64,000 nt of DNA from Haliotis rufescens. Taxonomy: Eukaryota. The position numbers and the translations under genes were made by a program. Each line of letters opens with the position of its first letter. Positions within the stretch are counted from its first letter, which is position 1. Where the stretch lies: positions 17,546,001-17,610,000 of the forward strand of contig NW_025964383.1 of assembly GCF_023055435.1 (NCBI RefSeq). The letters run 5' to 3'. The notes under the pieces are model-generated. The model had not been told where the DNA came from, did not search any database, and was given only the letters and a program-made list of their open reading frames with translations. Of this stretch, positions 1-55,400 are shown piece after piece.

Positions 1-419
1 AGAGACTTCCTCCAGCAGAAAGGCAGCAGAACCATGAAGTGGCCCTCCCTCAGTCCCGATTTAAATCCCATTGAGCACCTGTGGGACGAGATTCAAAGAC
101 GGCTGAATGACGTCCGACCAAGGCCGACAACTGGCTCAAGTGCCTATGGCCTTCATCAACCGCCTCATCAATTCCATGTATCGACGTTGCACGGCAGTCA
201 TCAATGCACATGGCGGACACACGAGATACTGACTTGTGATGCCATTTTCTCAGAGACTAGTGTTGTGTTTCACTTTGAGAACATTTGACACTTTAATTTC
301 AACCTTGATGATCAGTTTTGCCAAGTTTCATCTTTTAATATGTCTCAAAGTATGTTTACAGTGTTTGGACAAATAATGTTTCTCATATATCTATCCATGT
401 TGACGTTTCATTTGCGGTT
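1..419 (+). mobile_element. Tc1/mariner DNA transposon, 3' remnant with right terminal inverted repeat
   Basis: ORF 34..288 begins WPSLSPDLNPIEHLWDEIQRRL (Tc1 DDE C-terminal motif). The sequence is closely similar to 28026..28429 and ends in GACGTTTCATTTGCGGTT running into a (TA)n tract. Confidence 0.88.
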
Positions 420-525
420 ATATATATATATATATATATACAAAAATGAGGTAAATGTTCACTCGGTGTACATGTAATATATAATAAAATAATAAAGTCC
501 ACGTTAGTCCATCATCTTCTTTATA

Positions 526-580
526 TCAGTTTCATACATAGTACTTTCGCTGTCTCATGACAGCTCTTCAGTGTAACTGA
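526..580 (-). ncRNA. Minimal type I hammerhead ribozyme (PLE pLTR)
   Basis: Exact reverse complement of the motif at 3132..3186. Confidence 0.8.
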
Positions 581-763
581 CAATGACATATAATGACGTC
601 ATACTTATGATGACGTCATAAATTACAACTGTGACGTCACAATGTATTTACACACTCCAGCGACGACACCAAGTAATTTAACAATTGTAGGGAGACTTTT
701 GAATTAAATATACAGTATTTGTAAAGTAACAGTGCAACATTTACGATTGAAATGACAAATCTA

Positions 764-2023
764 TTAATACATTCTAGAGTTCAACTTTGGTTTCATCAAT
801 TGGATAAACATTTGTTCTTTTTCCAGTCTCAGCTGCTTGTTACTTGTATACAATTTATAAAACGGAAAAATAGTAAATTTCCCGTTTCCGCAATCATCAA
901 TGTGTTTGCTGACACCTAAGCATCGAACATTAGGGTCTCTTATCTGCTGTTTGTGTACAGTGACTCTATCTTTTAATTCCATGCCGGTTTCACCGATGTA
1001 GTTTTCGCCGCATCCCGAACATCTCATAACATACACCACATCTTTGCTGCGGCAGTTCATGTCGGCTTTCACATTGAAACCCTTGCCATTTGCAAAAAGG
1101 AAAGTAGTACCTTCACTTATGATGTTACACGTGCCGCATCTTGGTGTGTTACATCTACTTACACATGGTACACTCTCTGTACAAGAATATTTGGATGGAC
1201 AAAGAATCTGCTTGAGATTTTTTGGTTGCCTGGTACTTTTTATAATTTTAAATTTATTCAGTCCTTGTTTCATTTTATCGCTTTGCTGTAAAATTGGGAG
1301 GTTGTCCCTTATGACTGGCATGATATCACAATTATTAGGATTGAAGGTGGACACAAACGGTATAATTTGATCGCCCACAGATTTTTCATTAGGTTTCAGG
1401 AGAGTATGTCTTGGAATTTTTAAAGACTTTTCTATTGCGTCATTTATGACGCGAAGCGGATATCCTAGCTTCCTGAGATACCCCATTAATTCTTTCAATC
1501 TTAAATCTCTTTTATCCGTTTCCGACACGATGGTACATACTCTCCGCGCAAGTGAATAAGGAATGTTAGTTCGTGTATGCCTGGGGTGACATGAACCGAA
1601 TTGTAGGTATTGATGGGTGTCCGTTGGTTTGTAGTAGATATCAGTTTTCAATTTAGTATCTTCCTTAACTACAAGGACGTCCAGAAATGGAATTTTGCTC
1701 TCGCTAGACTCCATAGTAAAACTGATGGAAGGATGGAGCTTATTAATAATATCCAGAAAAATGTCTAAATTTTCACGGGTTGAGAGCCAAACTAAAAAGC
1801 AGTCGTCCAAGAATCGCTTCCAAGTTTCGCGCACATGTTTGGCAATGGATTCTGACATGGAATCGTGTACCTTCCTGTAAAGAATATCCTCTATGTAACC
1901 CATCACAAGTGTAGCGTATGTTGGGGCGACTTTCGTTCCCATGGCCGTTCCCTTTCTTTGATGATAGAATTTTCCGTTGAAACAGAAGGTATTATTTTCT
2001 AAGACTAATCTTAAAGATTCCAT
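764..2023 (-). CDS. PLE reverse transcriptase (partial) + GIY-YIG endonuclease, 5'-truncated
   Basis: RT motifs KGTAMGTKVAP, RFLDD, IPFLDV, YYKPTD; Cys linker CNTPRCGTC; endonuclease VVYVMRCSGCGENYIGETG ... RVTVH ... LN. N-terminal RT motifs are missing. Confidence 0.9.
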   Translation of the reverse strand: MESLRLVLENNTFCFNGKFYHQRKGTAMGTKVAPTYATLVMGYIEDILYRKVHDSMSESIAKHVRETWKRFLDDCFLVWLSTRENLDIFLDIINKLHPSISFTMESSESKIPFLDVLVVKEDTKLKTDIYYKPTDTHQYLQFGSCHPRHTRTNIPYSLARRVCTIVSETDKRDLRLKELMGYLRKLGYPLRVINDAIEKSLKIPRHTLLKPNEKSVGDQIIPFVSTFNPNNCDIMPVIRDNLPILQQSDKMKQGLNKFKIIKSTRQPKNLKQILCPSKYSCTESVPCVSRCNTPRCGTCNIISEGTTFLFANGKGFNVKADMNCRSKDVVYVMRCSGCGENYIGETGMELKDRVTVHKQQIRDPNVRCLGVSKHIDDCGNGKFTIFPFYKLYTSNKQLRLEKEQMFIQLMKPKLNSRMY

Positions 2024-2033
2024 AATGAAACTT

Positions 2034-2948
2034 GTCCTTGTAGTTAAGGAAGATACTAAATTGAAAACTGATATCTACTACAAACCAACGGACACCCATC
2101 AATACCTACAATTCGGTTCATGTCACCCCAGGCATACACGAACTAACATTCCTTATTCACTTGCGCGGAGAGTATGTACCATCGTGTCGGAAACGGATAA
2201 AAGAGATTTAAGATTGAAAGAATTAATGGGGTATCTCAGGAAGCTAGGATATCCGCTTCGCGTCATAAATGACGCAATAGAAAAGTCTTTAAAAATTCCA
2301 AGACATACTCTCCTGAAACCTAATGAAAAATCTGTGGGCGATCAAATTATACCGTTTGTGTCCACCTTCAATCCTAATAATTGTGATATCATGCCAGTCA
2401 TAAGGGACAACCTCCCAATTTTACAGCAAAGCGATAAAATGAAACAAGGACTGAATAAATTTAAAATTATAAAAAGTACCAGGCAACCAAAAAATCTCAA
2501 GCAGATTCTTTGTCCATCCAAATATTCTTGTACAGAGAGTGTACCATGTGTAAGTAGATGTAACACACCAAGATGCGGCACGTGTAACATCATAAGTGAA
2601 GGTACTACTTTCCTTTTTGCAAATGGCAAGGGTTTCAATGTGAAAGCCGACATGAACTGCCGCAGCAAAGATGTGGTGTATGTTATGAGATGTTCGGGAT
2701 GCGGCGAAAACTACATCGGTGAAACCGGCATGGAATTAAAAGATAGAGTCACTGTACACAAACAGCAGATTAGAGACCCTAATGTTCGATGCTTAGGTGT
2801 CAGCAAACACATTGATGATTGCGGAAACGGGAAATTTACTATTTTTCCGTTTTATAAATTGTATACAAGTAACAAGCAGCTGAGACTGGAAAAAGAACAA
2901 ATGTTTATCCAATTGATGAAACCAAAGTTGAACTCTAGAATGTATTAA
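2034..2948 (+). CDS. Second, shorter PLE copy: RT thumb + GIY-YIG endonuclease
   Basis: The protein is identical to the C-terminal ~300 aa of the minus-strand ORF. The N-terminus of the listed ORF (1977..2033) is only the antisense of the other copy. Confidence 0.85.
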   Translation, partial: VLVVKEDTKLKTDIYYKPTDTHQYLQFGSCHPRHTRTNIPYSLARRVCTIVSETDKRDLRLKELMGYLRKLGYPLRVINDAIEKSLKIPRHTLLKPNEKSVGDQIIPFVSTFNPNNCDIMPVIRDNLPILQQSDKMKQGLNKFKIIKSTRQPKNLKQILCPSKYSCTESVPCVSRCNTPRCGTCNIISEGTTFLFANGKGFNVKADMNCRSKDVVYVMRCSGCGENYIGETGMELKDRVTVHKQQIRDPNVRCLGVSKHIDDCGNGKFTIFPFYKLYTSNKQLRLEKEQMFIQLMKPKLNSRMY

Positions 2949-3131
2949 TAGATTTGTCATTTCAATCGTAAATGTTGCACTGTTACTTTACAAATACTGT
3001 ATATTTAATTTAAAAGTCTCCCTACAATTGTTAAATTACTTGGTGTCGTCGCTGGAGTGTGTAAATACATTGTGACGTCACAGTTGTAATTTATGACGTC
3101 ATCATAAGTATGACGTCATTATATGTCATTG

Positions 3132-3186
3132 TCAGTTACACTGAAGAGCTGTCATGAGACAGCGAAAGTACTATGTATGAAACTGA
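3132..3186 (+). ncRNA. Minimal type I hammerhead ribozyme (PLE pLTR)
   Basis: TCAGTTACA-CTGAAGA-GCTGTC(ATGA)GACAGC-GAAA-GTAC-TA-TGTA-TGA-AACTGA: canonical CUGANGA and GAAA cores, 6-bp stem II, palindromic AGTACT stem III and a bulged stem I. Confidence 0.82.
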
Positions 3187-3225
3187 TATAAAGAAGATGA
3201 TGGACTAACGTGGACTTTATTATTT

Positions 3226-3227
<2 letters not shown>

Positions 3228-3277
<50 letters not shown>
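3228..3277. repeat. (TA)n microsatellite
   Basis: About 25 uninterrupted TA units. Confidence 0.95.
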
Positions 3278-3279
<2 letters not shown>

Positions 3280-3586
3280 ATGCATTTATATGCATTTATA
3301 TGCATGATCCGACATTTATATGCATGATCCGACTAATATATGTCAAGAAATATGAACACTTTTCTGTACGATATGTTATATGCATTCACATACTGGTCCT
3401 GACGATGTACGTGAAAACAAACATGCCTGAACATGTGGAAATGTAACAGCCTGCTGGAATAAATCTAAAAAATAAGGAAAACCAAAACAGACAAAAACAC
3501 CCAGTTCTTTCATATGGCCAGTAAATTATTGTGAATGGTCTTTTTTTGAATGGTGTATTTAACATTTGAAAACACTGCATCCACAG

Positions 3587-5090
3587 GTTCGCTGCATCTC
3601 CCACAGACCATACCTGGATGCATATTCTACGCAAGCTGGTGGTTGTTTTGCATCACCATTGTCGCAGTTTACGCGGGCAATCTCTTTGCAACTGTCTCAG
3701 TGGTAAAAGAACAAATACCCTTCAATACGATGGAAGAGCTTGCAGAAAATGATGACTTCAAGATTATCATTTCTAAAGGGTCCTCTACTCAAGATATCTA
3801 CAAGGTCATTGCAATGGAAACTGCAATTTTATTGTCTTTATACTTACTCCGAACCCCTGTTCTCATATTGTAGAGAAAGGCACACATCGAAATAGATCAT
3901 GGATTGGAACGTTTGTCGGTTGCAGATGGCTTACTACTTAAATCCCATTTTGTAAATTAAATTTGATGCCAAGAATGAAATACTAAGCAACGTACGCTCC
4001 ATATCCTCAACCTACTTCTATCAGCTGACTTCCAATAAATGTGCTTTCTGAACGCTTTTCAGTATTCTGATGATAGTGTGAGCAAGAAAATCTGGACAAA
4101 AGTGTTGGACACCCGATCTTCAAATATCCAAAACTCTCTGGATGAGGATCGTCACATTAGGATGCTCCTACGGTCTAGCTACTACGCATACATCACCGGT
4201 TCCTTCACGGCTGATGGTATAGAAAAGACAGTTCATAACCTCCGAAGGATGAAATGTAGTACTGGTCCGAAATATCTAAGCCTGCCCTTTCCCGTCAATT
4301 CACCTCTCGCGGAGTTATTTTCAGACAAGTAAGAACTAAACACTCACATGTTTCATCTCTAAAAGACGATCTTAGATAAAAGAAATGTATCCTATCTAGT
4401 GATATATGCGGTGGTATAGTTTGTTGAAATTTGTGCAATATATGTTAATGAACTGGAGTCAATACAATAACTTCTGAAATGAGTGAGTGAGTTTGGTTTT
4501 ACGCCGCTTTTAGCAATATTCCAGCAATATCACGGCGGGGGCACCAGAAATGGGCTTCACACATTGTACCCATGTCGGGAATCGAACCCGGGTCTTCGGC
4601 GTGACGAGCGAACGCTTTAACCACTAGGCTACCCGACCGCCCCACTTCTGAAAAGAAAGGATGACCTAATTCCCTTGGTATTTTAAGTGAAGAGACAGTT
4701 ATTGTTATTGAGTGAGTGGGTGAGTATGGTTAAACGCCGCTCCACCATATTACGGCGGGGAATACCATAAATGGGGTCGGGCCCTCGGTGTAACGGGCGA
4801 ACGCGTTAACCACAAGGGTACTCACCGCCCCTATTGTTATTGATTTGCAGTTGTATTAAAAATATACGTCCTTCTGTTCCAGACTTATTCGCCTGTATGA
4901 TAACGGCATGCTGGAAGCCTGGGAAAGAAAATGGTCCAGCACAAAACGGGAGGAAGATGTACACGCAATGACGAAGGTTGACATGAGTAACTTGCGGAGT
5001 GCCTGGACAATGTGTGTATCAGGAATTACAGTAGCCATCACTATACTAGGAATTGAACGTTTCCTAAACTACCGTGTCAACAAACATTGA
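3587..5090 (+). CDS. Divergent ionotropic receptor A (3' part: M3, S2, M4); upstream exons lie outside the window
   Basis: AG/GT-bounded exons 3587..3804, 4063..4328, 4883..5090 splice in frame. M3 motif VYAGNLFAT (SYTANLAAF-like), then FNTMEELAE, YAYI, and LIRLYDNGMLEAWERKW followed by hydrophobic M4. Confidence 0.88.
4480..4643 (-). mobile_element. tRNA-derived SINE family A
   Basis: A-box TAGCCTAGTGG, B-box GGTTCGATTCC, (ACTC)n tail, target duplication ACTTCTGAAA. Confidence 0.9.
4711..4831 (-). mobile_element. Degenerate SINE family A
   Basis: Diverged copy flanked by a TATTGTTATTGA duplication. Confidence 0.7.
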
Positions 5091-19813: not shown

Positions 19814-22800
19814 ATGGACGTTGTACGCATATACATATATGTAGTTAGTCATTTGGTGCTTTTCGTCGGTCCGTCCTGCTCTCATTTCATGAACTTGACA
19901 GGTTTGTATATTGTCACTTTTATAGTTTGTATATTGTCCCTAATGTTACACTGCATTGGTTTGGTGAACCTTACCTAGAGCAGATACATAATGTACCTCT
20001 CTTATACTGCTTGTGACATACGCAGAACTTCACTAAATGGTTCCTCATGAGTAGTTTTTATGATAATCAAAAATAATTATAATTTTTTTATATGGCAACG
20101 TAGTCAATACTTTAGTCGTTATACTCAAAGCACAGTACTTTTTGATATGTGACAGAGCAACTTATCCCCAACAATATCATGCATTACTATGATTCTTAAA
20201 TGTACATTTGTTGGTTCCTAAATTTGGCACTTCCAATGTTGTTAATACGAATATAAAACATCCTAAAGGCATTCAAACTAAATACATCCGCTGTGTTATT
20301 GCTGGAATATTTGCTAAAAGAGCGTAAATTCCATCTCACTCACTTGATCATACTAAATACATATACATGAATTGTGATTTCCTTTTGCAAGGTTCCAATG
20401 TACATTATAGTTTTTATCTTAACATTTATCAAACAGCACCTTCCAGCATAATACTTGGAAAATATGAACTCCATCACCTTTTAAGCAAGATGTGTCTCCA
20501 TCCGGGCTCATCTTTGATTCTTGTTGGTCATTCATCTATGGGTAAGTGTATCTTCCTTTAATTCGTCAAATTCACACAAACCACATTTGAATCATTAGTC
20601 TGTGAAGACATTAGTTTGCGTTCAAGGTCATCGGCAAACATGCCTATTGTTCATGTTCATAGTATTCCTGTTATTAAGTAAGGATAAGAATTTATGGATG
20701 AACAACTTCTTTATTACAATTAAGAGCGACGTTTCGGTGGTGTAGGTTCTAACACCGTTATCAAGCAAGTGAGAATTTATGGATGAACAACTTCTTTATT
20801 ACAATTAAGAGCGACGTTTCGGTGAAGGTTCTAACACCGTTATCAATCAAGTGAGAATTTATGGATAAAAAACTTCTTTATTACAGTTAATAGCGACGTT
20901 TCGGTGTAGGTTCTAACACCGTTATCAAGCAAGTATATAATCACTTGCTTGATAACGGTGTTAGAACCTACACCGAAACGTCGCTCTTTAATTGTAATAA
21001 AGAAGTTGTTCATCCATAAATTCTTATCCTTACTTAGTCCTCCAACTTCTATATGCCTATCAAAGAAGTAATTCCCGTTATTATTTAAAATTCCTATTAC
21101 TAAACAGGAAGAGACGTACATAACGCTGTTGAAGACTGGACTACACGGCACAGCGTGACTGAAATGTTTTTCCATGTGCATGCCTTTGAACAGGGTCTGA
21201 CCGGCTTAATTGAGAAATCTCTCCAGAAGAACCAGCTCAACATTTATCGCAAATTGCTCAACTTTGTCGTCTTCTGTGACGGTATCAACAACTGCTTCCC
21301 ACGCATCATAAATATCGTACGTTAACTAAATATAATACACGAATCTAAGATTTTCGCTTGTTAGAAATACTGTTTTCAATTGTAAGTTCAATTGACCGTT
21401 TCTAAAGAAAGCGTATCCTTTCTTCACAACATACAAACGTTATAATTACGTAAATTTATCATTTATTCGATCTCCAAAAGTCTTCCAGAAAAGACAAGGA
21501 AAGCGGACAAGGAACACTGCTGCGTCATTTTTCGAAATGGTTCTTCCTGAATGTGGACCCCCCATTATTATCAGAAGTACATGCTGATCTGGACAACATA
21601 GCAATAGCTGTCAAGGTAACTGGCAACAATATATATCCGTTTAGGGGTTGAGAGAAACTGACACTAAACTAAATGATTGAAGCCATAATGAAATAGTCAG
21701 TATTGACAAAGAATTATTATTTCATATTGCATTAAAGCTTATTCCCTAAAGTTGTTTGTTACTTTCGTTATTAGGAAAAGAACACATCTAGTCGCTCAAA
21801 TGTGAAAATCAGCACTCTCTTGTGGAAGTCCAACACCCGGAAATGGTCGCAAATTGGTGACTTGGCAAATAACGGGGACAATTACTCCGCCTTCATTGCT
21901 CCTCTCTTCCCCAATACGGCATACATGTTGAATGGAAGAAAACTGAAAATTGGCGTCTTGGAGGTGAAATACTAGAATTATATGTTGACATTTTAAATGC
22001 TTTTTAATAATTCATACCACATAAACTCATATTTCATTGCAAGTTGAGATGATATTATAAAAACGTTTTAAAGCAATCGTTCTAAGGAAACCAATTCTGT
22101 CTAAATTATTGTATGGTAAAAATGTTAATGTCAAGTATTAGGAGAATGATCAATATTGACGACAAACTTAACACCAAAGCACATCGTATTGTTTGCACGT
22201 GCCTTACACACGTGTGTGCACAACATCCATTGAATGCCATGGCCAGCAATGAGCCCCGACCTTTCGCCTTGGGCATGATATTGAAACGTGTGCATTAACG
22301 TCATGGGCCGAGACCACCTTGGCTGAACAGACTCCCTCAAATAACCATTGGGATACTTATACCCAGGATATCCCGTTGCGTGAATGAATGTTTGACAAAT
22401 CGTGGCGGTTTCGTGAAAAGCGTGAAAATTCACATTTTACTCCTATCTTCCTTCAAGATCGTTGGCGGTCATAACATCTACTATCATACATCAATCACAA
22501 CTGGTTGTAACGTGTTCCCAATGCGTCCATTTGGCTGATACGAGAAACCAATATCTCTTTCAATTTTTAGCCAAGTACGGCGTAGAGGGTATATACAATG
22601 TCAACGACAGATAATAGGCAGTCTCGGAAACAGGTTTCAGTGCAAAAGGCAAAATAGCAGTGAAAATTATACGAGTGAAAAACTGATTCACAAGAAAAAT
22701 AATCTCTTCAAGTAAAGGGAAATGTTAACTGGAGCCATAAACAACATCATTTATGCTTTTGGTTAAACGTAAAGTTTACGAATCTATATTAGGAGATAAC

Positions 22801-27151: not shown

Positions 27152-28429
27152 TACTGAACCGCAAAAAAACGTCACCCCAAGTAACATTGCATGAAAAGTT
27201 GTCATTTAAATATCTGGGTAATGTTTGACAAAGTTTCTAAAATTTAACATTACATTGTCTGGAAAAATTAAAATTGATGATAAAAAAACACAAAGCAGAT
27301 GACAATAAAACCGATGGCCCAAACGCATCATGGCAACGACCATGGGAAGCCGATGCACGTGAGTTCCGTACAAATTGAAATGCACACGCGTTCCCCCATT
27401 TCTTGCCCTATAAACATCCACCCAGATCGGATAACATTCATTCGTTATTGAATTGCTGTCACATGCCAAGATAGACAAGAAATCAGCGACACCAAGCCCT
27501 TGGACGATTGCAAGCTGGACAAACCGCCCGGCAATGTAGCCAATGCCTTTCCAGTCCACGTAAGGACCATATACAGGCTTCAGCAAACGGTAACAGACAA
27601 CCAACACTTCAGATGATCGACCACGTATTGGAAGACCAAGGGTCACCACCCGACGTCAGGATCGTTAGATTGTGCTACAGCATCTCCAAGATCGCTTTGT
27701 TACTGCTGCGGAAACTACTCGACAGACCATGGGGACACACCAGCGACACATCAGTGCGGACACCGTGCGTCTGGCGACGCCGTGGGGAACGTGATTCGGA
27801 TGCTTGTGTTGTTGAGAGAGACTCGTGGGGTAGTCCAAGCATCATGGTGTGGAGTGGAATTGGTCTTGCACGGAGGGTTGGCCTTGTGACCTTCCATATC
27901 ATCGGTCCAGGGAGAGGCAATAGTGTCACAGCAGCTCGGTACATTGATCAAGTCTTGAGACCACACGCCATACCTCATTTGGCACGTCGGCGCAACTTCG
28001 AGATTCAGCATGATACCGCCCGTGCCCACACTGCGAGAGCAACAAGAGACTTCCTCCAGCAGACTGGCATCAGAACCATGCATCGGCCTGCCTTCAGTCC
28101 CGATATAAATCCCACTGAGCACCTGTGGCACGAGATTCAAAGACGGCTGAATGACGTCCGACCAAGGCCAACAACTGCAGCCGAACTGCGTCAGGCGTTC
28201 CTCAGAGTGTGGGCTCAAGGACAAACGAGATACTGACTTGTGATGCCATTTTCTCAGAGACTAGTGTTGTGTTTCACTTTAAGAACATTTGACACTTTAA
28301 TTTCAACCTTGATAATCAGTTTTGCCAAGTTTCATCATTTTAATATGTCTCAAAGTATGTTTACAGTGTTTGGACAAATAAGGTTTTTCATGTATCTATC
28401 CATGATGACGTTTCTCTTGCGGTTCAGTA
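27152..28429 (+). mobile_element. Internally deleted Tc1 (DD34E) transposon with both TIRs
   Basis: TIRs TACTGAACCGCAAAAAAACGTCA / TGACGTTTCTCTTGCGGTTCAGTA with TA flanks. ORF 27508..28236 has IMVWSGI, QHDTARAH and SPDINPTEHLW with 34 residues between D and E; in-frame stop near the original ATG (27463). Confidence 0.9.
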
Positions 28430-31283: not shown

Positions 31284-32480
31284 GCAACAGCTTATCAAAC
31301 ATGATGAAATATTTTTTTTAAATCTTGTTATTTAATAAAGTTTGTTGGAGAAATACATTTGAAAAATAAATGACTTGAAAATATGAAATAGGATGCGATG
31401 AAATTAAACATACTTCTATGAAGGGTTATTTCATTTATTCTTTTTAAAACACTGTGCCCTGGGGTAACCATTATTTTGAACTATTCAAGAATAAAAGTAA
31501 TAATCTTGAACAGGTGTAATATTTGTTAAATGTATTACTACCTGTGACCCCGTTTCGGAACATTCTAAGATAGCTGACCTATGCACTTATGTGTAATTAC
31601 GCGTTCCAGAAGACTATCGTCTTGGAACCGTTCTTGTCCTCATATTAGAATGGAGATATGCCTACTGTGTTTTGAAATTTGATGTAGTCCGACGGTACAA
31701 TGTACATAAGATACCTCTTACTTATACAATAAGCGTTAAAGCGCTAGGATCCAAATGAAAATGTGAGGTATCGAATCTAATGTGTGGCTGCATCAAATTT
31801 TAATACACAGTAGGTTTATCTCCTAAATAACAACCCGACCACAGAGCACATAAATCGTAATCCCATGAAAACTGCAACGCGATTCGCTTCCTGCGTGTGT
31901 ACTTCTGTTTTCGATCATGCAACTTCCTATGTGCTTATTGGATTGGAAACATGGAGAGAGTTCGGGTTTTTGACCGGCATCACTGAGGGCAATGTCGGCT
32001 AAAAATATTTTACCAGTCCAGTTTCGAACTCGATAATTATATAACGTGTTGCACGATGTAAAATATAAGTACTCGTATTTGAAGGAAAGTGTCTTAGGAA
32101 TTGAACCATTTTGCATGTGTCCCGACCACAGCTTCCTGCACTGAAAAAGTAACAGTTAATGATTGGAATAATTAAAATCTACCTCTCAAAAGCAGACTCA
32201 AATGCGATCAAAAGCTTGTGCTAACAATCGCTATGAAGCGTTGATGGTACCAGGTGTTTGCAAATATCCTGACCCACCGGTGGCGGCCATCACAAAAACA
32301 TACAAAGGCAAGTCAATTCTTTCCCTGATAACGGAGAACATTTGATACAAATCTAAATAGGGATTTGTATCGAATATTAAAATACATCCGCAGACAAAGG
32401 GTTAAAGTTTAAGACATGATCAGCAGACGTGTTAAGGAAAGACAAGTTCTATGGGTGAACAACTTCTTTATTACAATTAG

Positions 32481-32520
32481 TGCGACGTTTCGGTGTAGAT
32501 CCTAACACCTTTATCAAGCA
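32481..32520 (-). ncRNA. Minimal hammerhead ribozyme variant (U3-A8 core)
   Basis: TGC-TTGATAA-A-GGTGT(TAGGATCT)ACACC-GAAA-CG-TC-GCA. Confidence 0.65.
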
Positions 32521-32525
32521 AGTGA

Positions 32526-32654
32526 NNNNNNNNNNNNNNNNNNNNNNNNNNNNNNNNNNNNNNNNNNNNNNNNNNNNNNNNNNNNNNNNNNNNNNNNNNN
32601 NNNNNNNNNNNNNNNNNNNNNNNNNNNNNNNNNNNNNNNNNNNNNNNNNNNNNN
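32526..32654. other. Assembly gap (129 N)
   Basis: Run of N. Confidence 1.
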
Positions 32655-33499
32655 ACCACGGAAGCTGATAGTGATGATTGGAAGCCAGTGAATTAGAAGC
32701 CAGTGAATTGTCTAATGGAGACAGAGTCAGCAAGCAGACTGATAGAGATGATTGGATGGACATAGGGATTTAGCAGTTAGGTGATCGTAAGCAGGCGGGA
32801 TGTAGTAGCCTTGATCTCTGTTCATTGCTGGCTGGATCCTTTTGATGTAGACGGCTTCTAGGAGTTTTCTGATTTTGTAGTCTGACATGTTTATTATTAT
32901 TGCTGATGTTTGTTATTATTGCTGATGTGTTTATAATGGTAGAAACGGTATATGATGATAAGTGTGTGACAGAACGTACACCGGGACCGAGTGGCCAATG
33001 TTCACGGTGCGGAGACCCTCTCTGTCACTTTCTCACATGCAGAATGTAGGACGGCGGTTCTTCATCGTCGACGAAGTTGTTGGTGATGTGGCGGCCGTAC
33101 AATCCGTCTCCTCCTGTTGATAATCTGTGCCGATCTCTCTGTCTGACTACCCTGGTAAAGCTTTGAATGGGTATCTTCTACATAGCGTGGTGTAAGGTCA
33201 GTCACCCACGTGCATATAAATACCTAAAATGCGGCGAGGTATTGGGACGGTAACCCCAGGATACCGAGTTACTTTTCTGACGCACATTTTTAAAATATCT
33301 GAAAAATGAACGTTGGGGGAAAATTGCGATAAATATCGATATTGAAACTGTATGCGTTTCGGTGTTATCACAAATCATGAGAAATTATTAAATCGTTCTC
33401 CATCAAAAAAGGAAGTAATAGGGAAATGGATTTTCCCCCCATGTGTAACACCTTTGTTTCAAGTAAGAGGCAACAGGCCCATAGAACATAACATTACAG

Positions 33500-37285: not shown

Positions 37286-40200
37286 TCAATGTTTGTTGAC
37301 ACGGTAGTTTAGGAAACGTTCAATTCCTAAAATAGTGATGGCTACTGTAATTCCTGATACACACATTGTCCAGGCACTCCGCATGTTACTCATGTCAACC
37401 TTCGTCATTGCAGGTACATATTCCTCCGTTGTTTTGCTGGACCATTTTCTTGCCCAGGCTTCCAGCATGCCGGTATCATACAGGCGAATGAGTCTGGAAC
37501 AGTAAGGTGTAGATTTATAGTACTACTGCTTAAGGGGTATAAACCTAAATACTGTCGTGCACAATGAAATTCCTTGTAGCGGGGGTCGGTCGGGTAGCCT
37601 AGTGGTTAAAGCGTTCGCTCCTCACGCCGAAGACCCGGGTTCGATTCCCGACATGGGTACAATGTGTGAAGCCCATATCTGGTGTCCCCCACCGTGATAT
37701 TGCTGGATTATTGCTAATAGCGGCGTAAAACCATACTCACTCACTCACTCACTCATACCTTGTAGCGGATTAACGCACACCAGTTTTTTCTTTTATATCT
37801 CCATGAACATTATAAAATATAAAGTAAATTCTTATAAATATATACGTCAGCAATAATAACTTCAAAGCCTTCTTATCTAATCATAAACACACAAACAAAT
37901 GAGGATAACAGTTACGAAATCAGTGACATCGTTAAACGGAGTAGCACAACAAGCCCTGCTCATTTAGTTATCAGCCAAATTCAAGGAAACAGTAGTCGGT
38001 TGGTGGGCTTGGTCTAATTTCTTTTCCGTTGATGGAAACATAACGCATAAACTTTGCTTGGTTATCCGATCAAATGCCACGGAATCACTTGTAATGTATT
38101 TATTAACGAATAACAATAACCGTCTATTCACTATTATCTTAATAACAATATGGCATCATTTCTTTAAGAAGAGATTATGTTCACATTATTGTGTTTGTTT
38201 GATTGTTGTTTAACGCCGCATTCAGCAATATTCCAGCTATATGACGGCGGTATGTCAATATATCGAGTTTGGACCAGACAATCCAATGATTGACATCATA
38301 AGCATCGATCCACGCAGTTGGGATACGATGGCATGCATCATCCAAGTCAGCGAGCCTGACCACCCGATCCCGTTAGTCGCCTCTTTATGACAAGCCTAGT
38401 CGCCTCTTATGGCAAGCACATGTTCACATTAATACATATTGTACAAAGTGGACCAACGCATATATCACTGGAAAAGTTAAATGTATTCTTTGAAGAGTGT
38501 CATTTAAATATGAAGCATGTGCGTGTTTAGTACTTACGTGTCTGAAAATAACCCCACAAGAGGTGAATTGACAGGAAAGGGCAGGCTTAGATATTTTGGA
38601 CCAGTACCACATCTAATCCTACGGAGGTTATTAAACGTCTCCTCCATGCCATCAACCGTATAGGAACCGGTTATGTATGCGTAGTAGCTAGACTGTACGA
38701 GCATCTTAATGTGAATATCCTCGTCCAGAGAGTTTTGGATGTTTGTAGATCGGGTGTCCAACACTTTTGTCCAGATTTTCTTACTCACGCTATCATTAGA
38801 ATACTGAAAAGCGTTCAGAAAATTATTGGAAATTAGCTGACAGAAGTATGTTGGGGATATGAGGCAAGAGTATGTTAGTATTTCATTCCTGGCATCAAAT
38901 TTAGTTTACAAAAAGGGATTTAAGTAGTAACTATTCGGATGGTTAATCACCTTCAGCAGACAAAAGTTACCATCCATGACCTACTACCATATGTGCCTTT
39001 CTCTACAATGCGACAAGAGGGACCTAGAGGAAGCATAAAGACAATACAATTACACAGTTCACAAAGCAAGTGTGCTTCTCACCTTGTAGGTATCTTCAGC
39101 ATATGACCCTCTAGTCATGATAATCTTGAAGTCGTCACTTTCTGCAAGCTCTTCTATCGTATTGAAGGGTATTTTCTCTTTTACCACTGATAAAATTGCA
39201 ACCAGATTACCCGTGTAAACTGCGACAATGATGATGCAAAACCACACCCAGCTTGTGTAGAATATGCGTCCTGAACTGGCCCGTGGGAGATGCAGCGAAC
39301 CTATGGATGCAATGTTTTCAAATGTTTAATTCACTGCTCAAAACAGGTTAAAGAACCCCTGATATTTTCGTCTTACTGTTGATGAACTATAATCTATAAA
39401 CTATAAACTATAATTGTTTTGGTAGTATATTTTTCCGTGTTTTGAGAAATTCAACCGATGTAGGCAAACTTTCTGTCACAAAGACTCACTGATGTAGTGG
39501 AGAAGTAAATATACTGCTTTAGAACATTTACAGTTGATTTCCGTAGGCTGATTATTGCGAATGCTATCACAAATATCATCACAGACATTGTACAAAATTG
39601 AGGCGAAAAAATGCTTTCGATAATCATATATCTCTACCAAATAGTGATGACACCAGGTGTTCGCGAGAAGTTGAGCATATTCAGCCCCTCCTATTGCTTC
39701 CGTCAGAAACACATACAAAGGCAAGACATATGGTACAAGTTGAAATACGGAATTCCATCGCACATCATTTTTGTTACTGATGAGTCACATTTGAAAATGT
39801 CCTCCACCTGTCTATCATTGACCTTCATCATCAAACATGTAAGTGTATTCTCCCCCATCGGTGGCACCCATCATAAGTACGTATTACTTAGTTGATTACT
39901 CTGTACCTTGGTTAGATGGAATTGGCTTACATGATTACACTGATGAGCTGTATTTTCATATCTGTGGGATGACTTAGGGAGCATAAATCAGCAAATATTA
40001 AACAACCCGGTCTCGAACAGTGATATGTAATATTAAAATTTTGTTCAAGAAGCAGTGTTTACAGAAGTTTTGAGTGATACGATGGTGCGAGAGAACCAAT
40101 ATCCTATTACGTGTTGGCTTAAACCAAACGGTGTTCTACTGTTTAATAACTATTAGGTATTGTGGTTGAACTTGGCAGAAAACATTTATTAAACCAAATT

Positions 40201-51688: not shown

Positions 51689-52440
51689 ATGAGCTGAGGA
51701 CCAAACTGTTGTTAAACGATTTTGTGACCGTATTTTGTCCAACGTGAAAGCCACATATTGTGTAAACTAACGTACTGTATAACAAATTTGCTTGACCTTT
51801 TCCAATCTTTATTATCACAACACATAAATTCAATTCACATTTCAGGACACGAATGATTATATTATATTTCCCGCATTAAATACCGTTTTACAATAGTAAG
51901 GTGTTCGGAATTTGCCCTGATAGAGCATGTAATACCAGTGTAAATACATCTGCAATTATTACCCCCTTGACAAATATAGAACCAGGCGACTGAATTGCAA
52001 ATAAAACAGGATGTCATACAAATGTCAACAACATTTCCAAATATCATGTCAAGTTGACTAAAACATGCAAACTTTGCAAATCATGTGTGTACATTACCAT
52101 TGACTTGAGGTCTGTCAGCTCCTTAACTCGTTAACGAGTTTGTTCAATGTTTTAGATTCCAGTCCTGTGCCATTATTTGGACTCACGTGAATTTCCGACA
52201 TACAGTAATGTTTCATCGATTTATCCCTGTAGTCATGCATCATTTAATAATTTACGCGTGGAGCTTGAGAACATTCCTTGCAGTGAATAAAAGCAACAAA
52301 ATTCTTTCCATATTCGTAATTATTATGAAACGCCTACGCCAAAGAATATCTCCATTATCCCCCGAAACAGATTTTATGGGAGTAAAAGGCAACGTAGCGG
52401 GAATATTATAGGAACGGATCACCGAATATCAGTCATCGCG

Positions 52441-55400
52441 AAAAGGGAACATATGTCCTATCCTAGCGGTAGCACCCGTCACTCACACAATCTTACAAGC
52501 ACATACAAGGAAAGTCACTTCTACATCTGGAAAATAAGGGAACATATATCCTGTCCTAGCGGTAGCACCCGTCACTCACACAATCTTACAAGCACATACA
52601 AGGAAAGTCACTTCTACATCTGGAAAAAAAGGAACATATGTCCTGTCCTAGCGGTAGCACCCGTCACTCACACAATGCAATCTTACAAACACATACAAGG
52701 AAAGTCACTTCTACATCTGGAAAATAAGGGAACATATATCCTGTCCTAGCGGTAGCACCCGTCACTCACACAATCTTACAAACACATACAAGGAAAGTCA
52801 CTTCTACATCTGGAAAATAAGGGAACATATATCCTGTCCTAGCGGTAGCACCCGTCACTCACACAATCTTACAAGCACATACAAGGAAAGTCACTTCTAC
52901 ATCTGGAAAAAAAAGGAACATATGTCCTGTCCTAGCGGTAGGATCCGTCACTCACACAATCTTACAAGCACATACAAGGAAAGTCACTTCTACATCTGGA
53001 AAAAAAAGGAACATATGTCCTGTCCTAGCGGTAGCACCCGTCACTCACACAATCTTACAAGCACATACAAGGAAAGTCACTTCTACATCTGGAAAAAAAA
53101 GGAACATATATCCTGTCCTAGCGGTAGCACCCGTCACTCACACAATCTTACAAGCACATACAAGGAAAGTCACTTCTACATCTGGAAAATAAGGGAACAT
53201 ATATCCTGTCCTAGCGGAAGCACCCGTCACTCACACAATCTTACAAGCACATACAAGGAAAGTCACTTCTACATCTGGAAAAAAAGGAACATATGTCCTG
53301 TCCTAGCGGTAGCACCCGTCACTCACACAATCTTACAAGCACATACAAGGAAAGTCACTTCTAAATCTGGAAAAAAAAGGAACATATGTCCTGTCCTACC
53401 GGTAGCACCCGTCACTCACACAATCTTACAAACACATAAAAGGAAAGTCACTTCTACATCTGGAAAATAAGGGAACATATATCCTGTCCTAGCGGTAGCA
53501 CCCGTCACTCACACAATCTTACAAGCACATACAAGGAAAGTCACTTCTACATCTGGAAAAAAAGGAAACATATGTCCTGTCCTAGCGGTAACACCCGTCA
53601 CTCACACAATCTTACAAGCACATACAAGGAAAGTCACTTCTACATCTGGAAAATAAGGGAACATATATCCTGTCCTAGCGGTAGCACCCGTCACTCACAC
53701 AATCTTACAAGCACATACAAGGAAAGTCACTTCTACATCTGGAAAAAAAGGAAACATATGTCCTGTCCTAGCGGTAGCACCCGTCACTCACACAATCTTA
53801 CAAGCACATACAAGGAAAGTCACTTCTACATCTGGAAAATAAGGGAACATATATCCTGTCCTAGCGGTAGCACCCGTCACTCACACAATCTTACAAGCAC
53901 ATACAAGGAAAGTCACTTCTACATCTGGAAAATAAGGGAACATATATCCTGTCCTAGCGGTAGCACCCGTCACTCACACAATCTTACAAACACATACAAG
54001 GAAAGTCACTTCTACATCTGGAAAATAAGGGAACATATATCCTGTCCTAGCGGTAGCACCCGTCACTCACACAATCTTACAAGCACATACAAGGAAAGTC
54101 ACTTCTACATCTGGAAAAAAAAGGAACATATATCCTGTCCTAGCGGTAGCACCCGTCACTCACACAATCTTACAAGCACAAACAAGGAAAGTCACTTCTA
54201 CATCTGGAAAAAAAAGGAACATATATCCTGTCCTAGCGGTAGCACCCGTCACTCACACAATCTTACAAGCACATACAAGGAAAGTCACTTCTACATCTGG
54301 AAAAAAAGGAACATATGTCCTGTCCTAGCGGTAGCACCCGTCACTCACACAATCTTACAAGCACATACAAGGAAAGTCACTTCTACATGTGGAAAAAAAG
54401 GAACATATATCCTGTCCTAGCGGTAGCACCCGTCACTCACACAATCTTACAAACACATACAAGGAAAGTCACTTCTACATCTGGAAAATAAGGGAACATA
54501 TATCCTGTCCTAGCGGTAGCACCCGTCACTCACACAATCTTACAAGCACATACAAGGAAAGTCACTTCTACATCTGGAAAATAAGGGAACATATATCCTG
54601 TCCTAGCGGTAGCACCCGTCACTCACACAATCTTACAAGCACATACAAGGAAAGTCACTTCTACATCTGGAAAAAAAAGAACATATGTCCTGTCCTAGCG
54701 GTAGCACCCGTCACTCACACAATCTTACAAGCACATACAAGGAAAGTCACTTCTACATCTGGAAAAAAAAGGAACATATATCCTGTCCTAGCGGTAGCAC
54801 CCGTCACTCACACAATCTTACAAGCACATACAAGGAAAGTCACTTCTACATCTGGAAAATAAGGGAACATATATCCTGTCCTAGCGGTAGCACCCGTCAC
54901 TCACACAATCTTACAAGCACATACAAATAAAGTCACTTCTACATCTGGAAAAAAAGGAACATATGTCCTGTCCTAGCGGTAGCACCCGTCACTCACACAA
55001 TCTTACAAGCACATACAAGGAAAGTCACTTCTACATCTGGAAAAAAAAGGAACATATATCCTGTCCTAGCGGTAGCACCCGTCACTCACACAATCTTACA
55101 AGCACATACAAGGAAAGTCACTTCTACATCTGGAAAATAAGGGAACATATATCCTGTCCTAGCGGTAGCACCCGTCACTCACACAATCTTACAAGCACAT
55201 ACAAATAAAGTCACTTCTACATCTGGAAAAAAAGGAACATATGTCCTGTCCTAGCGGTAGCACCCGTCACTCACACAATCTTACAAGCACATACAAGGAA
55301 AGTCACTTCTAAATCTGGAAAAAAAGGAACATATATCCTGTCCTAGCGGTAGCACCCGTCACTCACACAATCTTACAAACACATAAAAGGAAAGTCACTT

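What the first reader, a model, noticed from the sequence alone, without database searches (positions are those of the whole stretch)
20675..21066. Intronic array of tiny hammerhead units (3 tandem + 1 inverted) with a non-canonical U3-A8 core
Seen: ~82-bp units, each reading on one strand TTGATAA-N-GGTGT(loop)ACACC-GAAA-CG-TC (small indels or substitutions in some units). The insertion has a ~16-bp degenerate target duplication and is absent from paralog C. Known: hammerhead C3-G8 is a Watson-Crick pair for which U3-A8 is a compensatory variant; minimal hammerheads with palindromic stem III (ACGU) work as dimers; tandem copies characterise PLE terminal repeats and non-LTR retrozymes. Inferred: a very small non-autonomous, retrozyme-like element that could release ~82-nt monomers or circles from the antisense strand, while the sense copy in the IR-B pre-mRNA is locked in a long hairpin. 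With IR-A, two paralogs independently carry a ribozyme-plus-antisense cassette in an intron.
Basis: partly seen in the sequence, partly recalled or inferred. Interest (0 to 1): 0.78.

Follow-up and report, generated by a model that had tools for sequence, protein, structure and literature searches.

The report
Truncated Penelope retroelement stub with hammerheads
The repeat in this intron is an ordinary, heavily shortened insertion of a Penelope-like retrotransposon, made only of copies of the element's last ~90 bases, each carrying the small hammerhead-ribozyme motif that such elements are already known to have.

Summary
Window 20675-21070 holds three tandem ~82-bp units, one inverted unit and a 34-nt one-sided extension, flanked by an 11-bp target duplication. 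Both paralogous introns in the window lack it.

It is not a separate tiny retrozyme-like element. The unit is the last ~94 nt of an abundant autonomous Penelope-like element (PLE). Longer copies continue upstream through a ~170-nt 3'UTR into a GIY-YIG endonuclease and reverse-transcriptase frame. The family shows the PLE insertion signature:
- variable 5' truncation;
- an optional inverted, independently truncated partner;
- a ~35-nt tail at one end only;
- 7-14-bp target duplications.

The motif UUGAUAA-N-helix II-GAAA-CG-UC fits the published PLE minimal hammerhead, including the U3-A8 core already described in Schistosoma PLEs. Related PLE families here keep the core and vary at N7, the bulge and loop 2. 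One helix II pair changes on both sides.

Cleavage is unproven: helix I is 2-3 bp and I found no RNA evidence. Tandem units are rare in the family, and two of the four motif copies here are weakened.

The scan has noted many such hammerhead/Penelope stubs elsewhere in this genome, and two follow-ups reached the same kind of verdict. New member of a known kind; low interest.

The parts
20664..20674 (.). Left target-site duplication, ATTCCTGTTAT
   Evidence: The sequence is present once at the empty site in both paralogous introns.
20675..20686 (-). Outer 12 nt of the inverted arm (TAAGTAAGGATA). This is the 'short' 3' end of the PLE, read on the minus strand.
   Evidence: Identical to the reverse complement of 21025-21036. 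The same end is seen in other copies.
20687..20771 (-). Tandem unit 1 (85 nt) of the inverted arm. The motif at 20764->20728 has a 3-nt ACC insertion.
20772..20853 (-). Tandem unit 2 (82 nt). The motif at 20846->20813 has a 4-bp helix II, and the base before U3 is changed.
20854..20934 (-). Tandem unit 3. The motif at 20928->20895 is intact.
20935..20942 (.). Head-to-head junction between the inverted and direct arms (ATATAATC). Most of it resembles the native bases upstream of ACTTGC.
   Evidence: Junctions vary between copies.
20943..21036 (+). Direct (sense) 5'-truncated PLE arm, from ACTTGC to the short 3' end CCTTACTTA.
   Evidence: It aligns with the 3' ends of longer PLE copies.
20949..20982 (+). 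Intact min-HHR motif on the host gene's sense strand: UUGAUAA-C-GGUGU-UAGAACCU-ACACC-GAAA-CG-UC. The predicted cut lies between 20982 and 20983.
   Evidence: descriptor features taken from PMC4209133.
21037..21070 (+). One-sided 34-nt PLE 'tail' (GTCCTCCAACTTCTATATGCCTATCAAAGAAGTA). It holds an ATG and a 7-bp internal stem. Its last ~12 nt are largely complementary to ACTTGCTTGATA at the arm's 5' end.
   Evidence: Read depth of family contigs ends in the bin 21046-21079.
21071..21081 (.). Right target-site duplication, ATTCCCGTTAT
20544..21108 (+). Host intron holding the insert, between plus-strand exons 20437-20543 and 21109-21314. Without the insert and one duplication copy it would be ~158 bp.
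   Evidence: Open frames and GT/AG borders read; exon paralogs; intron alignment. Pfam does not name the gene.

Best explanation
Window 20675-21070 is one insertion of a Penelope-like retroelement (PLE) so strongly 5'-truncated that only its last ~94 nt were copied. One copy lies in sense orientation and carries the 34-nt PLE 'tail'. A second lies head-to-head in inverted orientation and has three tandem units. An 11-bp target duplication flanks the whole.

Shown:
- The unit is the 3' end of an RT plus GIY-YIG element.
- The family has the PLE insertion signature.
- The insertion came after the host gene duplicated.

Inferred from published in-vitro PLE work: the element's endonuclease nicked both target strands ~11 bp apart. 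Reverse transcription started on each strand at one of two internal sites of the PLE RNA, the short end or the end 34-35 nt further on. Both cDNAs stopped near the RNA's 5' end and were joined head to head. The extra 82-nt units came either from template jumps during that event or from later slippage.

Each unit carries the PLE minimal hammerhead in its U3-A8 form. The motif is conserved in related PLE families of this genome, so it is a real homologue of PLE hammerheads. Whether it cleaves, which would require two sense copies pairing through the palindromic ACGU, is unproven. In the host pre-mRNA the element would fold into a long hairpin instead, and no host function is indicated.
For: Link to an autonomous PLE:
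- In L124, L126, L127 and L128 the unit is preceded by a ~170-nt untranslated stretch and a frame ending ...GVYHIPCNCGQAYIGETSRPLKTRIKEH...*. L123 has the same frame and stretch but breaks off before the unit.
- Pfam GIY-YIG scores E = 5.7e-4.
- Another copy (L130) has a 601-aa open frame with Pfam RVT_1 at 30.4 bits against a cut-off of 29.6.
- That frame is collinear, at 30% identity, with the RT-C and GIY-YIG parts of the window's other PLE (E = 2e-24 and 3e-07).

Insertion signature:
- Target duplications of 7-14 bp were found in 28 of 42 orientated tail matches tested. Most of the 14 misses came from my end pattern not fitting a subfamily.
- The tail lies on one side only in 25 of 28 simple copies, on both sides in 1, and was not found in 2.
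- In a tail-anchored sample of 20, by eye: about 11 solo copies truncated anywhere from 20 nt to over 200 nt, about 7 with an independently truncated inverted partner, and 2 uninterpretable.
- These are the features described for PLEs: inverted 5'-truncated copy, 30-40-bp tail at one end, 8-10-bp duplications (PMC8557442 and PMC3846280, passages). The purified PLE protein cuts and extends both strands and starts at two internal sites, with the tail lying between them (PMC11167929, passages).

Empty sites: both paralogous introns lack the insert.

Hammerhead:
- Every feature of the published PLE min-HHR except helix I length is present: an unpaired nucleotide between 9 and 10.1, G10.1-C11.1, no helix III loop, palindromic 15.2-16.2, and the U3-A8 variant.
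- 0 descriptor hits in 100 shuffles.
- Six 3' ends from more distant EN matches (53-76% aa identity), plus this family and its subfamily, were aligned as 9 rows. All keep U3-A8, G12A13A14 and ACGU. They differ at N7, the bulge, loop 2 and H17. One helix II pair is G-C in 5 rows and A-U in 3.

Abundance: 1502 exact motif matches and 630 exact tail 14-mers.
Against: - I saw no copy with an intact 5' region. So the claim that the tail is the start of the next tandem unit or of the ORF is inferred, not shown.
- GIY-YIG in L128 scores 20.6 bits, below Pfam's cut-off of 22.6.
- Helix I is only 2 bp (3 in one subfamily). The published range is 4-5 bp, with 2 bp in the D. virilis variant.
- Covariation rests on a single event. 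12 of 500 shuffles reach the observed score.
- One of the nine rows (L140) breaks helix II.
- 5 of the 11 related 3' ends fetched had no motif. They are cut short, or replaced by other inserts or unrelated sequence.
- Rfam finds no hammerhead at E <= 10. It also misses the canonical PLE hammerhead at 3141, so this says little.
- No RNA evidence. Two raw small-RNA runs of a related organism gave 0 and 1 reads. The other two runs are contigs of unknown kind.
- The 5' half of the motif can instead pair with the tail, so part of its conservation may serve that pairing.
Confidence: 0.88

Rival explanations
1. One reading: an independent, very small non-autonomous retrozyme-like element. Its ~82-nt tandem units are transcribed, self-cleave as dimers and circularise, and PLE enzymes copy them.
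For: - The window copy has three tandem units.
- A few other loci have 2-4 tandem units of about this length (L002, L003).
- Arrays of shorter modules exist.
- Animal non-LTR retrozymes are reported to be related to PLE pLTRs (bioRxiv 10.64898/2026.07.22.740005, abstract and section 14 read).
Against: - The unit is contiguous with PLE 3'UTR and coding sequence in longer copies.
- About 65 of the first 100 listed arms that reach ACTTGC continue into that native upstream sequence (my count by eye).
- None of 20 tail-anchored copies had a tandem unit, and none of those 100 arms had the 82-nt junction.
- Truncation points are spread over the unit.
- There is no RNA evidence.
Confidence: 0.06
2. 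A foldback MITE: a DNA transposon with long inverted arms, moved by a Mutator-like transposase that makes 9-11-bp duplications.
For: - Many copies are near-perfect ~180-190-bp palindromes.
- Several target duplications are 9-11 bp.
- The association of Mutator/foldback elements with 9-bp duplications is recalled, not taken from a call.
Against: - The ends are not inverted repeats. A ~35-nt tail sits on one side only.
- Duplications range from 7 to 14 bp.
- Solo arms and tail-only stubs of 20 nt with duplications exist.
- The two arms are truncated independently (L105, L115, L119).
- The arms continue into RT/EN coding sequence.
Confidence: 0.02
3. The hammerhead-like motif is not a ribozyme. 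Its conservation would reflect other roles of the PLE 5' leader or pLTR: promoter-proximal sequence just after TATATATA...TCACT, recognition by the RT, or a long-range stem between ACUUGCUUGAUA and the tail's UAUCAAAGAAGU.
For: - The minimum-free-energy fold of arm plus tail pairs the motif's 5' half with the tail.
- That complementarity changes in parallel in the 53% family: AGTCTTGCTTGA against TCAAACAAGACT.
- The block AAAGAAGTTGTT(C)ATCCATAAA downstream is as conserved as the motif.
- Helix I is 2-3 bp.
- Published PLE min-HHRs cleave poorly in vitro (PMC4209133).
- HHR cleavage was not needed for PLE insertion in vitro, and no reads ended at the site (PMC11167929).
Against: - GAAA-CG-UC and helix II are not explained by the tail pairing.
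- Variation between families falls on exactly the positions that a hammerhead leaves free, plus one compensatory pair.
- The motif sits where PLE hammerheads sit.
- Chance matches are negligible.
Confidence: 0.15

Closest known systems
Minimal hammerhead ribozymes of Penelope-like elements (min-HHR), including the U3-A8 variant of the Schistosoma mansoni Cercyon PLE (Cervera & de la Pena 2014, PMC4209133)
   Same: - Core boxes.
- An unpaired nucleotide between A9 and G10.1.
- G10.1-C11.1.
- No helix III loop, with palindromic 15.2-16.2 (ACGU), implying dimers.
- U3-A8 instead of C3-G8.
- Position in the PLE terminal repeat.
- Many solitary copies, and pairs on opposite strands ~100 bp apart.
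   Different: - Helix I is 2-3 bp. The published range is 4-5 bp, and 2 bp in the D. virilis variant.
- Helix II is 5-6 bp rather than 7-8.
- It is found in another host genome and other PLE families.
- Activity is untested here.
Canonical EN+ Penelope-like element insertions (Arkhipova and co-workers: PMC3846280, PMC8557442; in-vitro work PMC11167929)
   Same: - RT followed by a C-terminal GIY-YIG domain.
- Strong 5' truncation.
- An inverted 5'-truncated partner.
- A 30-40-bp tail at one end only.
- Short variable target duplications.
- TATATATA followed ~22 nt later by TCACT in the terminal repeat, as described for the A. vaga Pen2a pLTR.
   Different: The window copy is an extreme stub with no coding sequence, and one arm is triplicated. 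I saw no full-length parent with its 5' end.
Animal non-LTR retrozymes (tandem hammerhead repeats expressed as small circular RNAs; PMC7229834, search listing only; bioRxiv 10.64898/2026.07.22.740005)
   Same: Tandem repeats that each hold a type I hammerhead working as a dimer, and a relationship to PLE terminal repeats.
   Different: - Tandem copies are the exception in this family.
- The unit is continuous with PLE coding sequence.
- No circular or unit-length RNA was seen.
- The published unit sizes (about 170-400 nt) are recalled from memory, not read here.
The window's own young PLE palindrome at 441-3233, with canonical C3-G8 min-HHRs at 3141 (+) and 571 (-)
   Same: The same architecture (two inverted 5'-truncated copies, hammerhead ~60 nt from the element's end) and a similar block ATAAAGAAG after the ribozyme.
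   Different: - A different PLE family: ~30% aa identity.
- C3-G8 core, no bulge, GUAC palindrome, longer helix I.
- Its copies are nearly identical to each other. EN matches to the U3-A8 family span about 47-94% identity, and the higher-identity ones often hold stop codons.

Membership tests
PLE-type minimal hammerhead (min-HHR) | Conserved core: (C/U)3-U4-G5-A6-N7-(G/A)8-A9 and G12-A13-A14-A15.1 | tested here: met
   UUGAUAA ... GAAA in the + strand copy and in all three - strand copies. These columns are invariant in all 9 aligned rows from several PLE families, except N7.
PLE-type minimal hammerhead (min-HHR) | Positions 3 and 8 form a Watson-Crick pair (C-G, or the published U-A covariant) | tested here: met
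   U-A in 9 of 9 rows. The U3-A8 variant is described in PMC4209133. There is no switch between C-G and U-A within this lineage, so this gives no covariation evidence of its own.
PLE-type minimal hammerhead (min-HHR) | Helix II with a G10.1-C11.1 closing pair, preceded by one unpaired nucleotide after A9 | tested here: met
   - G-C in 9 of 9 rows.
- The bulge is C or A.
- Helix II is 5-6 bp.
- Pair 4 is G-C in 5 rows, A-U in 3 and unpaired in 1.
PLE-type minimal hammerhead (min-HHR) | No helix III loop; palindromic 15.2-16.2, then U16.1 and H17 | tested here: met
   A-CG-U-C in 8 of 9 rows and A-CG-U-U in 1.
PLE-type minimal hammerhead (min-HHR) | Helix I of about 4-5 bp | tested here: not met
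   Only 2 pairs are kept (C-G in 8 of 9 rows, G-C in 7 of 9). A third pair forms in 2 of 9 rows. The D. virilis PLE variant with a 2-bp helix I is a published precedent.
PLE-type minimal hammerhead (min-HHR) | Self-cleavage after H17, as a dimer | not testable with these tools
   No RNA ends were obtained. Array junctions at GTC| are only suggestive, and an unbiased listing contradicts them.
Penelope-like element insertion | The element encodes an RT with a GIY-YIG endonuclease | tested here: met
   Seen in longer copies of the same family, not in the window copy. RVT_1 is above its cut-off. GIY-YIG is below its cut-off in one fragment but is supported by BLASTP against the window's other PLE.
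Penelope-like element insertion | Variable 5' truncation, with an optional inverted 5'-truncated partner | tested here: met
   Tail-anchored sample of 20 and the first 100 listed arms.
Penelope-like element insertion | A 30-40-bp 'tail' at one end only | tested here: met
   34-35 nt. One-sided in 25 of 28 simple copies and in the window. Also present in a 53%-identity family (L131).
Penelope-like element insertion | Short target-site duplication and an empty site | tested here: met
   7-14 bp in 28 of 42 tests. 11 bp in the window, with two paralogous empty sites.
Non-LTR retrozyme | Family members are tandem arrays of unit-length hammerhead repeats without coding sequence | tested here: not met
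   No tandem units in 20 tail-anchored copies, and no 82-nt junction in the first 100 listed arms. The unit continues into PLE coding sequence.
Non-LTR retrozyme | Unit-length linear and circular RNAs | tested here: inconclusive
   0 and 1 reads in two raw small-RNA runs of a related organism. Those libraries would not capture hammerhead products anyway. No other raw RNA runs were offered.
Foldback / MITE DNA transposon | Terminal inverted repeats at both ends and a duplication of fixed length | tested here: not met
   One-sided tail, solo arms, and duplications of 7-14 bp.

The most novel reading that the evidence does not exclude
The genome may hold DNA 'fossils' of what the PLE hammerhead and promoter do in vivo.

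(a) About a third of the arms that reach ACTTGC stop within 3 nt of a TCA(C/G)T initiator that lies ~30 nt after a conserved TATATATA. This is as expected if many stubs are run-off cDNAs. Such cDNAs would run from an internal reverse-transcription start back to the transcription start of the terminal repeat.

(b) At five loci, tandem arrays of 40-43 nt run exactly from that 5' end to the predicted scissile bond GUC|. This is as expected if the RT jumped end-to-end over released 5' cleavage fragments.

(c) The ribozyme's 5' half and the tail's 3' end stay complementary across PLE families. That suggests a switch between a hammerhead fold and a 5'-3' stem ending at the reverse-transcription start site.

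If these hold, PLE hammerheads, whose role is an open question, would be shown to cut in vivo and to be coupled to template choice.
Probability: 0.18. Interest if true: 0.55.

Novelty: new member of a known kind. Interest (0 to 1): 0.24.

Why it matters
For annotation, this feature and many look-alikes in this genome should be masked as Penelope-like element stubs, not treated as host ribozyme cassettes or as a new mobile-element class.

Of modest interest to specialists:
- The U3-A8 minimal hammerhead, so far described from a flatworm PLE, is kept across several PLE families of another animal genome. The variation follows a hammerhead-like pattern.
- The thousands of truncated copies form a natural data set: 5' ends, tails, junctions and short-module arrays. 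It could be mined to test where PLE transcripts start, where reverse transcription starts, and whether the ribozyme cuts in vivo.

No effect on the host gene is indicated beyond a ~400-bp hairpin-forming insert in a short intron.

Tried and rejected
1. Rfam. No hammerhead family matched at E <= 10 on 20300-21400; only generic hairpin and miRNA matches appeared. I reject this as evidence, because the same kind of scan on 1-4000 also missed the canonical PLE hammerhead at 3141.

2. Foldback MITE idea. Dropped after finding the one-sided tail and the solo stubs.

3. A ~390-nt monomer (unit - tail - 240 nt - unit), suggested by L020. Rejected: only the last 113 of those 246 nt recur in the genome.

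4. Looking for the parent through sequence downstream of the tail. In the first 100 tails listed, the downstream sequence is unrelated flank. The one recurring continuation was a nested insertion inside another repeat.

5. Looking for the U3-A8 motif downstream of 11 PLE copies that are 42-63% identical to the window's young PLE. Only C3-G8 motifs were found.

6. Full-length parent. The stretch upstream of L128 has no frame. In L130 the PLE-like part of the frame starts only at residue ~43 (no other copy matches further 5'), and another retroelement interrupts its 3' end. The 5' region was never seen.

7. Cleavage footprints.
- Junctions exactly at GTC| occur at five loci: C8, C13, C575, C79 and C1. 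That search was built to find them.
- The unbiased listings of tandem periods cover only the first 100 places each, all on contigs C1 and C2. They show 37-nt arrays (two arrays of about 2 and 3 kb, junction GAAAC|ACTTGC) and periods of 47, 69 and 77 nt. None has its boundary at the scissile bond.
- Among the roughly 35 of 100 arms that end at ACTTGC, only one partner arm starts at the scissile bond.
- I count this as inconclusive.

8. RNA evidence. See: nothing usable. The contig runs show only that the family, with the same boundaries, is abundant in two organism labels.

9. Host gene name. Pfam on the two flanking exons, searched separately, gave nothing. No informative longer exon was found.

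10. Supplementary files of PMC4209133 (consensus families, activity gels) are closed. They may show how active U3-A8 variants are.
Full report
WHAT IS THERE. Tandem Repeats Finder reports one array at 20687-20934: period 82, 3.0 copies, 93% matches. The repeat finder shows an inverted copy directly after it. Arms 20889-20934 / 20943-20988 are 98% complementary with 8 nt between them. The outermost 49 nt (20675-20723 / 20988-21036) are 100% complementary. On the strand that reads TTGATAA-C-GGTGT-TAGAACCT-ACACC-GAAA-CG-TC, the motif is intact at 20949-20982 (+) and at 20928->20895 (-). It has a 4-bp helix II and a changed flanking base at 20846->20813. It carries a 3-nt insertion at 20764->20728.

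BOUNDARIES AND AGE.
- Comparison with other copies shows that the element does not end at 21036. It runs on through a conserved one-sided stretch to 21070.
- It is flanked by an 11-bp duplication: ATTCCTGTTAT at 20664-20674 and ATTCCCGTTAT at 21071-21081.
- It lies in a plus-strand intron (20544-21108) between exons 20437-20543 and 21109-21314.
- The two other copies of these exons in the window have introns of 180 and 167 bp. Both lack the insert and hold the target sequence once.
- The insertion is therefore younger than the gene duplications.
- Pfam does not name the host gene from the two exons searched separately.

A LARGE FAMILY.
- The genome has 1.33 Gb in 615 contigs.
- A search with the element gave 1669 first-look candidates, of which 40 were scored. 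Most scored matches are ~180-190-bp palindromes of one unit plus its inverse.
- A 33-nt pattern of the motif has 736 + 766 exact matches and 0 in the reversed control.
- A 14-mer of the one-sided stretch has 309 + 321 matches against 3 + 3 in the control.
- Contigs of two public runs cover only 20672-21079 at very high summed depth. One run is from a different organism label. The other also covers the flanks. This gives the same boundaries independently.

WHAT KIND OF ELEMENT.
- Among 28 simple copies, the conserved ~35-nt stretch lies on one side only in 25, on both sides in 1, and was not found in 2.
- Target duplications of 7-14 bp were found in 28 of 42 orientated tail matches tested.
- For an unbiased view I took the first 20 places of the tail 14-mer. 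By eye, about 11 are solo sense copies truncated at any point, from 20 nt of tail only to more than 200 nt. About 7 have an inverted partner whose length is independent of the sense arm. Two are uninterpretable. None has tandem units.
- Walking upstream settled the identity. In L124, L126, L127 and L128 the unit is preceded by ~170 nt of conserved non-coding sequence. Before that lies a frame with ...GVYHIPCNCGQAYIGETSRPLKTRIKEH..., ending ...DPNQP*.
- Pfam gives GIY-YIG at E = 5.7e-4, 20.6 bits, just under the cut-off of 22.6.
- Another copy (L130) has a 601-aa open frame with RVT_1 at 30.4 bits against a cut-off of 29.6.
- That frame aligns collinearly, at 30% identity, with the RT-C and GIY-YIG parts of the window's other Penelope element.
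- The '82-bp unit' is therefore the 3'-terminal part of an endonuclease-containing Penelope-like element.

AGREEMENT WITH PUBLISHED PLE BIOLOGY (passages read with paper reading 'find').
- PMC3846280: target duplications of 8-10 bp, a 31-bp tail, and a pLTR with TATATATA followed 20 bp later by TCACT.
- PMC11167929: the purified anole PLE protein cuts and extends both target strands. It starts reverse transcription at two internal sites of the RNA, and the tail is the sequence between them.
- The family here fits point by point. In all eight aligned copies that reach that far, from several PLE families, a TATA run (TATATATA in seven) lies ~22 nt before TCACT or TCAGT, and ACTTGC starts within that initiator-like motif.
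- My mechanism is an inference from these papers, not something shown here. It proposes two staggered nicks, two cDNAs started at the short end and at the long end, and a head-to-head join.

THE HAMMERHEAD.
- Cervera & de la Pena (PMC4209133; passages) define the PLE minimal hammerhead. It has no helix III or loop 3 and palindromic 15.2-16.2. [quoted passage not shown] Helix I is short: 4-5 bp, or 2 bp in D. virilis.
- They report a natural U3-A8 covariant in the S. mansoni Cercyon PLE with ~1300 hits. Many motifs are solitary or lie in pairs on opposite strands 100-700 bp apart. Cleavage in vitro is low and occurs only in dimers or trimers.
- The motif here meets every item except helix I length.
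- A search of the paper library for 'hammerhead ribozyme' plus 'U3-A8' returned only that paper.
- My descriptor finds 6 motifs in the window: two canonical C3-G8 ones in the Penelope palindrome at 441-3233, three in this insert, and one in another copy of the same family at ~32517. It finds none in 100 dinucleotide shuffles.
- Comparative evidence: I fetched the 3' ends of 11 PLE copies whose endonuclease is 52-77% identical to the parent. Six still have the region and five do not. Those five are cut short, or replaced by other inserts or unrelated sequence.
- In the 9-row alignment, U3, U4, G5, A6, A8, A9, G12-A14 and ACGU never vary. N7 is U or C, the bulge is C or A, loop 2 varies, and H17 is C or U.
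- Helix II pair 4 is G-C in 5 rows and A-U in 3. One decayed row breaks two pairs.
- That is one compensatory event, and 12 of 500 shuffles reach the observed score. The evidence is modest, but the pattern of free against fixed positions is what a hammerhead predicts.
- Helix I keeps only two pairs.

AGAINST A WORKING RIBOZYME HERE.
- There is no RNA evidence. The only raw-read RNA runs offered were size-selected small-RNA libraries of a related organism, with 0 and 1 reads. Such libraries would not capture 5'-OH or cyclic-phosphate ends anyway.
- The whole insert folds into a hairpin of about -188 kcal/mol on the gene's strand.
- On the opposite strand, only one of the three motifs is unaltered.
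- In vitro, hammerhead cleavage was not needed for PLE insertion (PMC11167929).

SIDE OBSERVATIONS THAT FEED THE BOLDER READING.
- (i) Of the first 100 listed arms that reach ACTTGC, about 35 stop within 3 nt upstream of it and about 65 continue into the native 3'UTR (counted by eye). This is a strong stop at the initiator-like site.
- (ii) Arrays of 40-43-nt modules run from that 5' end exactly to GTC| at five loci: C8, C13, C575, C79 and C1. However, the unbiased period listings show two 37-nt arrays of about 2 and 3 kb with the junction at GAAAC|ACTTGC, and arrays of 47, 69 and 77 nt. Those listings cover the first 100 places each, on contigs C1-C2 only. The boundary at the scissile bond is therefore not exclusive.
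- (iii) ACTTGCTTGATA at the arm's 5' end is complementary to the tail's end TATCAAAGAAGT at 10 of 12 positions. The 53% family shows parallel changes: AGTCTTGCTTGA against TCAAACAAGACT.

EARLIER NOTES OF THE SCAN.
- The notes on this window pointed me to the Penelope palindrome at 441-3233 and its hammerheads. I confirmed both and used them as a control.
- A genome-wide look-up lists 74 notes with 'hammerhead' in this genome.
- Two follow-ups at other loci conclude 'back-to-back Penelope retroelement stubs with hammerheads' and 'decayed hammerhead-derived minisatellite'. My result agrees, but I did not re-examine their loci.

VERDICT. The feature is an ordinary, extremely 5'-truncated Penelope-like element insertion. 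Its unit carries the already described U3-A8 minimal hammerhead. It is a new member of a known kind, of low interest. The family may still be useful as a data set for the open question of what PLE hammerheads do.

Noticed in passing
window 32437-32526 (minus-strand sense), next to the N run 32527-32655: Another arm of the same PLE family (the subfamily with loop AGATCCTA), with an intact U3-A8 motif. It ends exactly at an N run, so a gap or mask sits where the palindrome centre would be. The N run was left as it is.
   Followed up: partly
window 441-3233: A palindrome of two inverted 5'-truncated copies of a different, young PLE family, with canonical C3-G8 min-HHRs at 3141 (+) and 571 (-). 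Many copies elsewhere match the window's 419-aa fragment at 96-100% identity, with open frames up to 789 aa. Rfam does not detect its hammerhead.
   Followed up: partly
G000:C2:42449066-42452296 and C2:44937872-44939844 or beyond: Two satellite-like arrays, about 3 and 2 kb over the listed coordinates, on opposite strands. The 37-nt unit is the PLE module ACTTGC-TTGATAAC-helix II-GAAAC, which lacks the last 3 nt of the hammerhead.
   Followed up: no
L051 (G000:C8:322300-323900), L142, L143, L144, L145: Tandem arrays of 40-43-nt modules that run from the arm's 5' end exactly to the predicted scissile bond GTC|. The arrays in L051, L142 and L145 end in a normal 3' part; L143 is deleted at its 3' end and L144 runs off the fetched stretch. 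This may be a footprint of cleavage plus template jumping, or chance boundaries.
   Followed up: partly
L124, L126, L131, L132, L134, L137, L139, L140 (alignment): A conserved TATATATA lies ~22 nt before TCACT or TCAGT, directly upstream of the hammerhead, in several PLE families. About 35 of the first 100 listed arms that reach ACTTGC end within 3 nt of this initiator-like site.
   Followed up: partly
window 20943-20954 against 21056-21069; L131: The 5' end of the arm (ACTTGCTTGATA) and the 3' end of the tail (TATCAAAGAAGT) are complementary at 10 of 12 positions. They change in parallel in a PLE family of 53% aa identity. AGAAGTT also occurs twice, and its complement AACTTCT once, within arm plus tail.
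   Followed up: partly
L055-L059 (for example G000:C2:5141400-5142800): One old insertion of this PLE stub, with the duplication TAACTTAAACAT, lies inside another repeat of over 700 bp. That repeat was then amplified, so the stub is carried along in at least five copies.
   Followed up: no
window 27508-28236 (+): A 242-aa ORF ending ...FSPDINPTEHLWHEIQRRL... It looks like a Tc1/mariner-type transposase fragment. This is a recalled resemblance and was not searched.
   Followed up: no
window 4567-4638 (-) and 37588-37659 (+): Two tRNA matches barely above Rfam's gathering score (30.1 and 29.1 bits against 29). They may be tRNA-derived repeats.
   Followed up: no
window 52001-58000: Strong strand asymmetry (GC skew about -0.24, AT skew about +0.25 over 6 kb).
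   Followed up: no
L130 3050-3301: The longest open PLE copy seen is cut just before ACTTGC by a sequence encoding a non-LTR-type RT motif (...ADDGAIW...).
   Followed up: no
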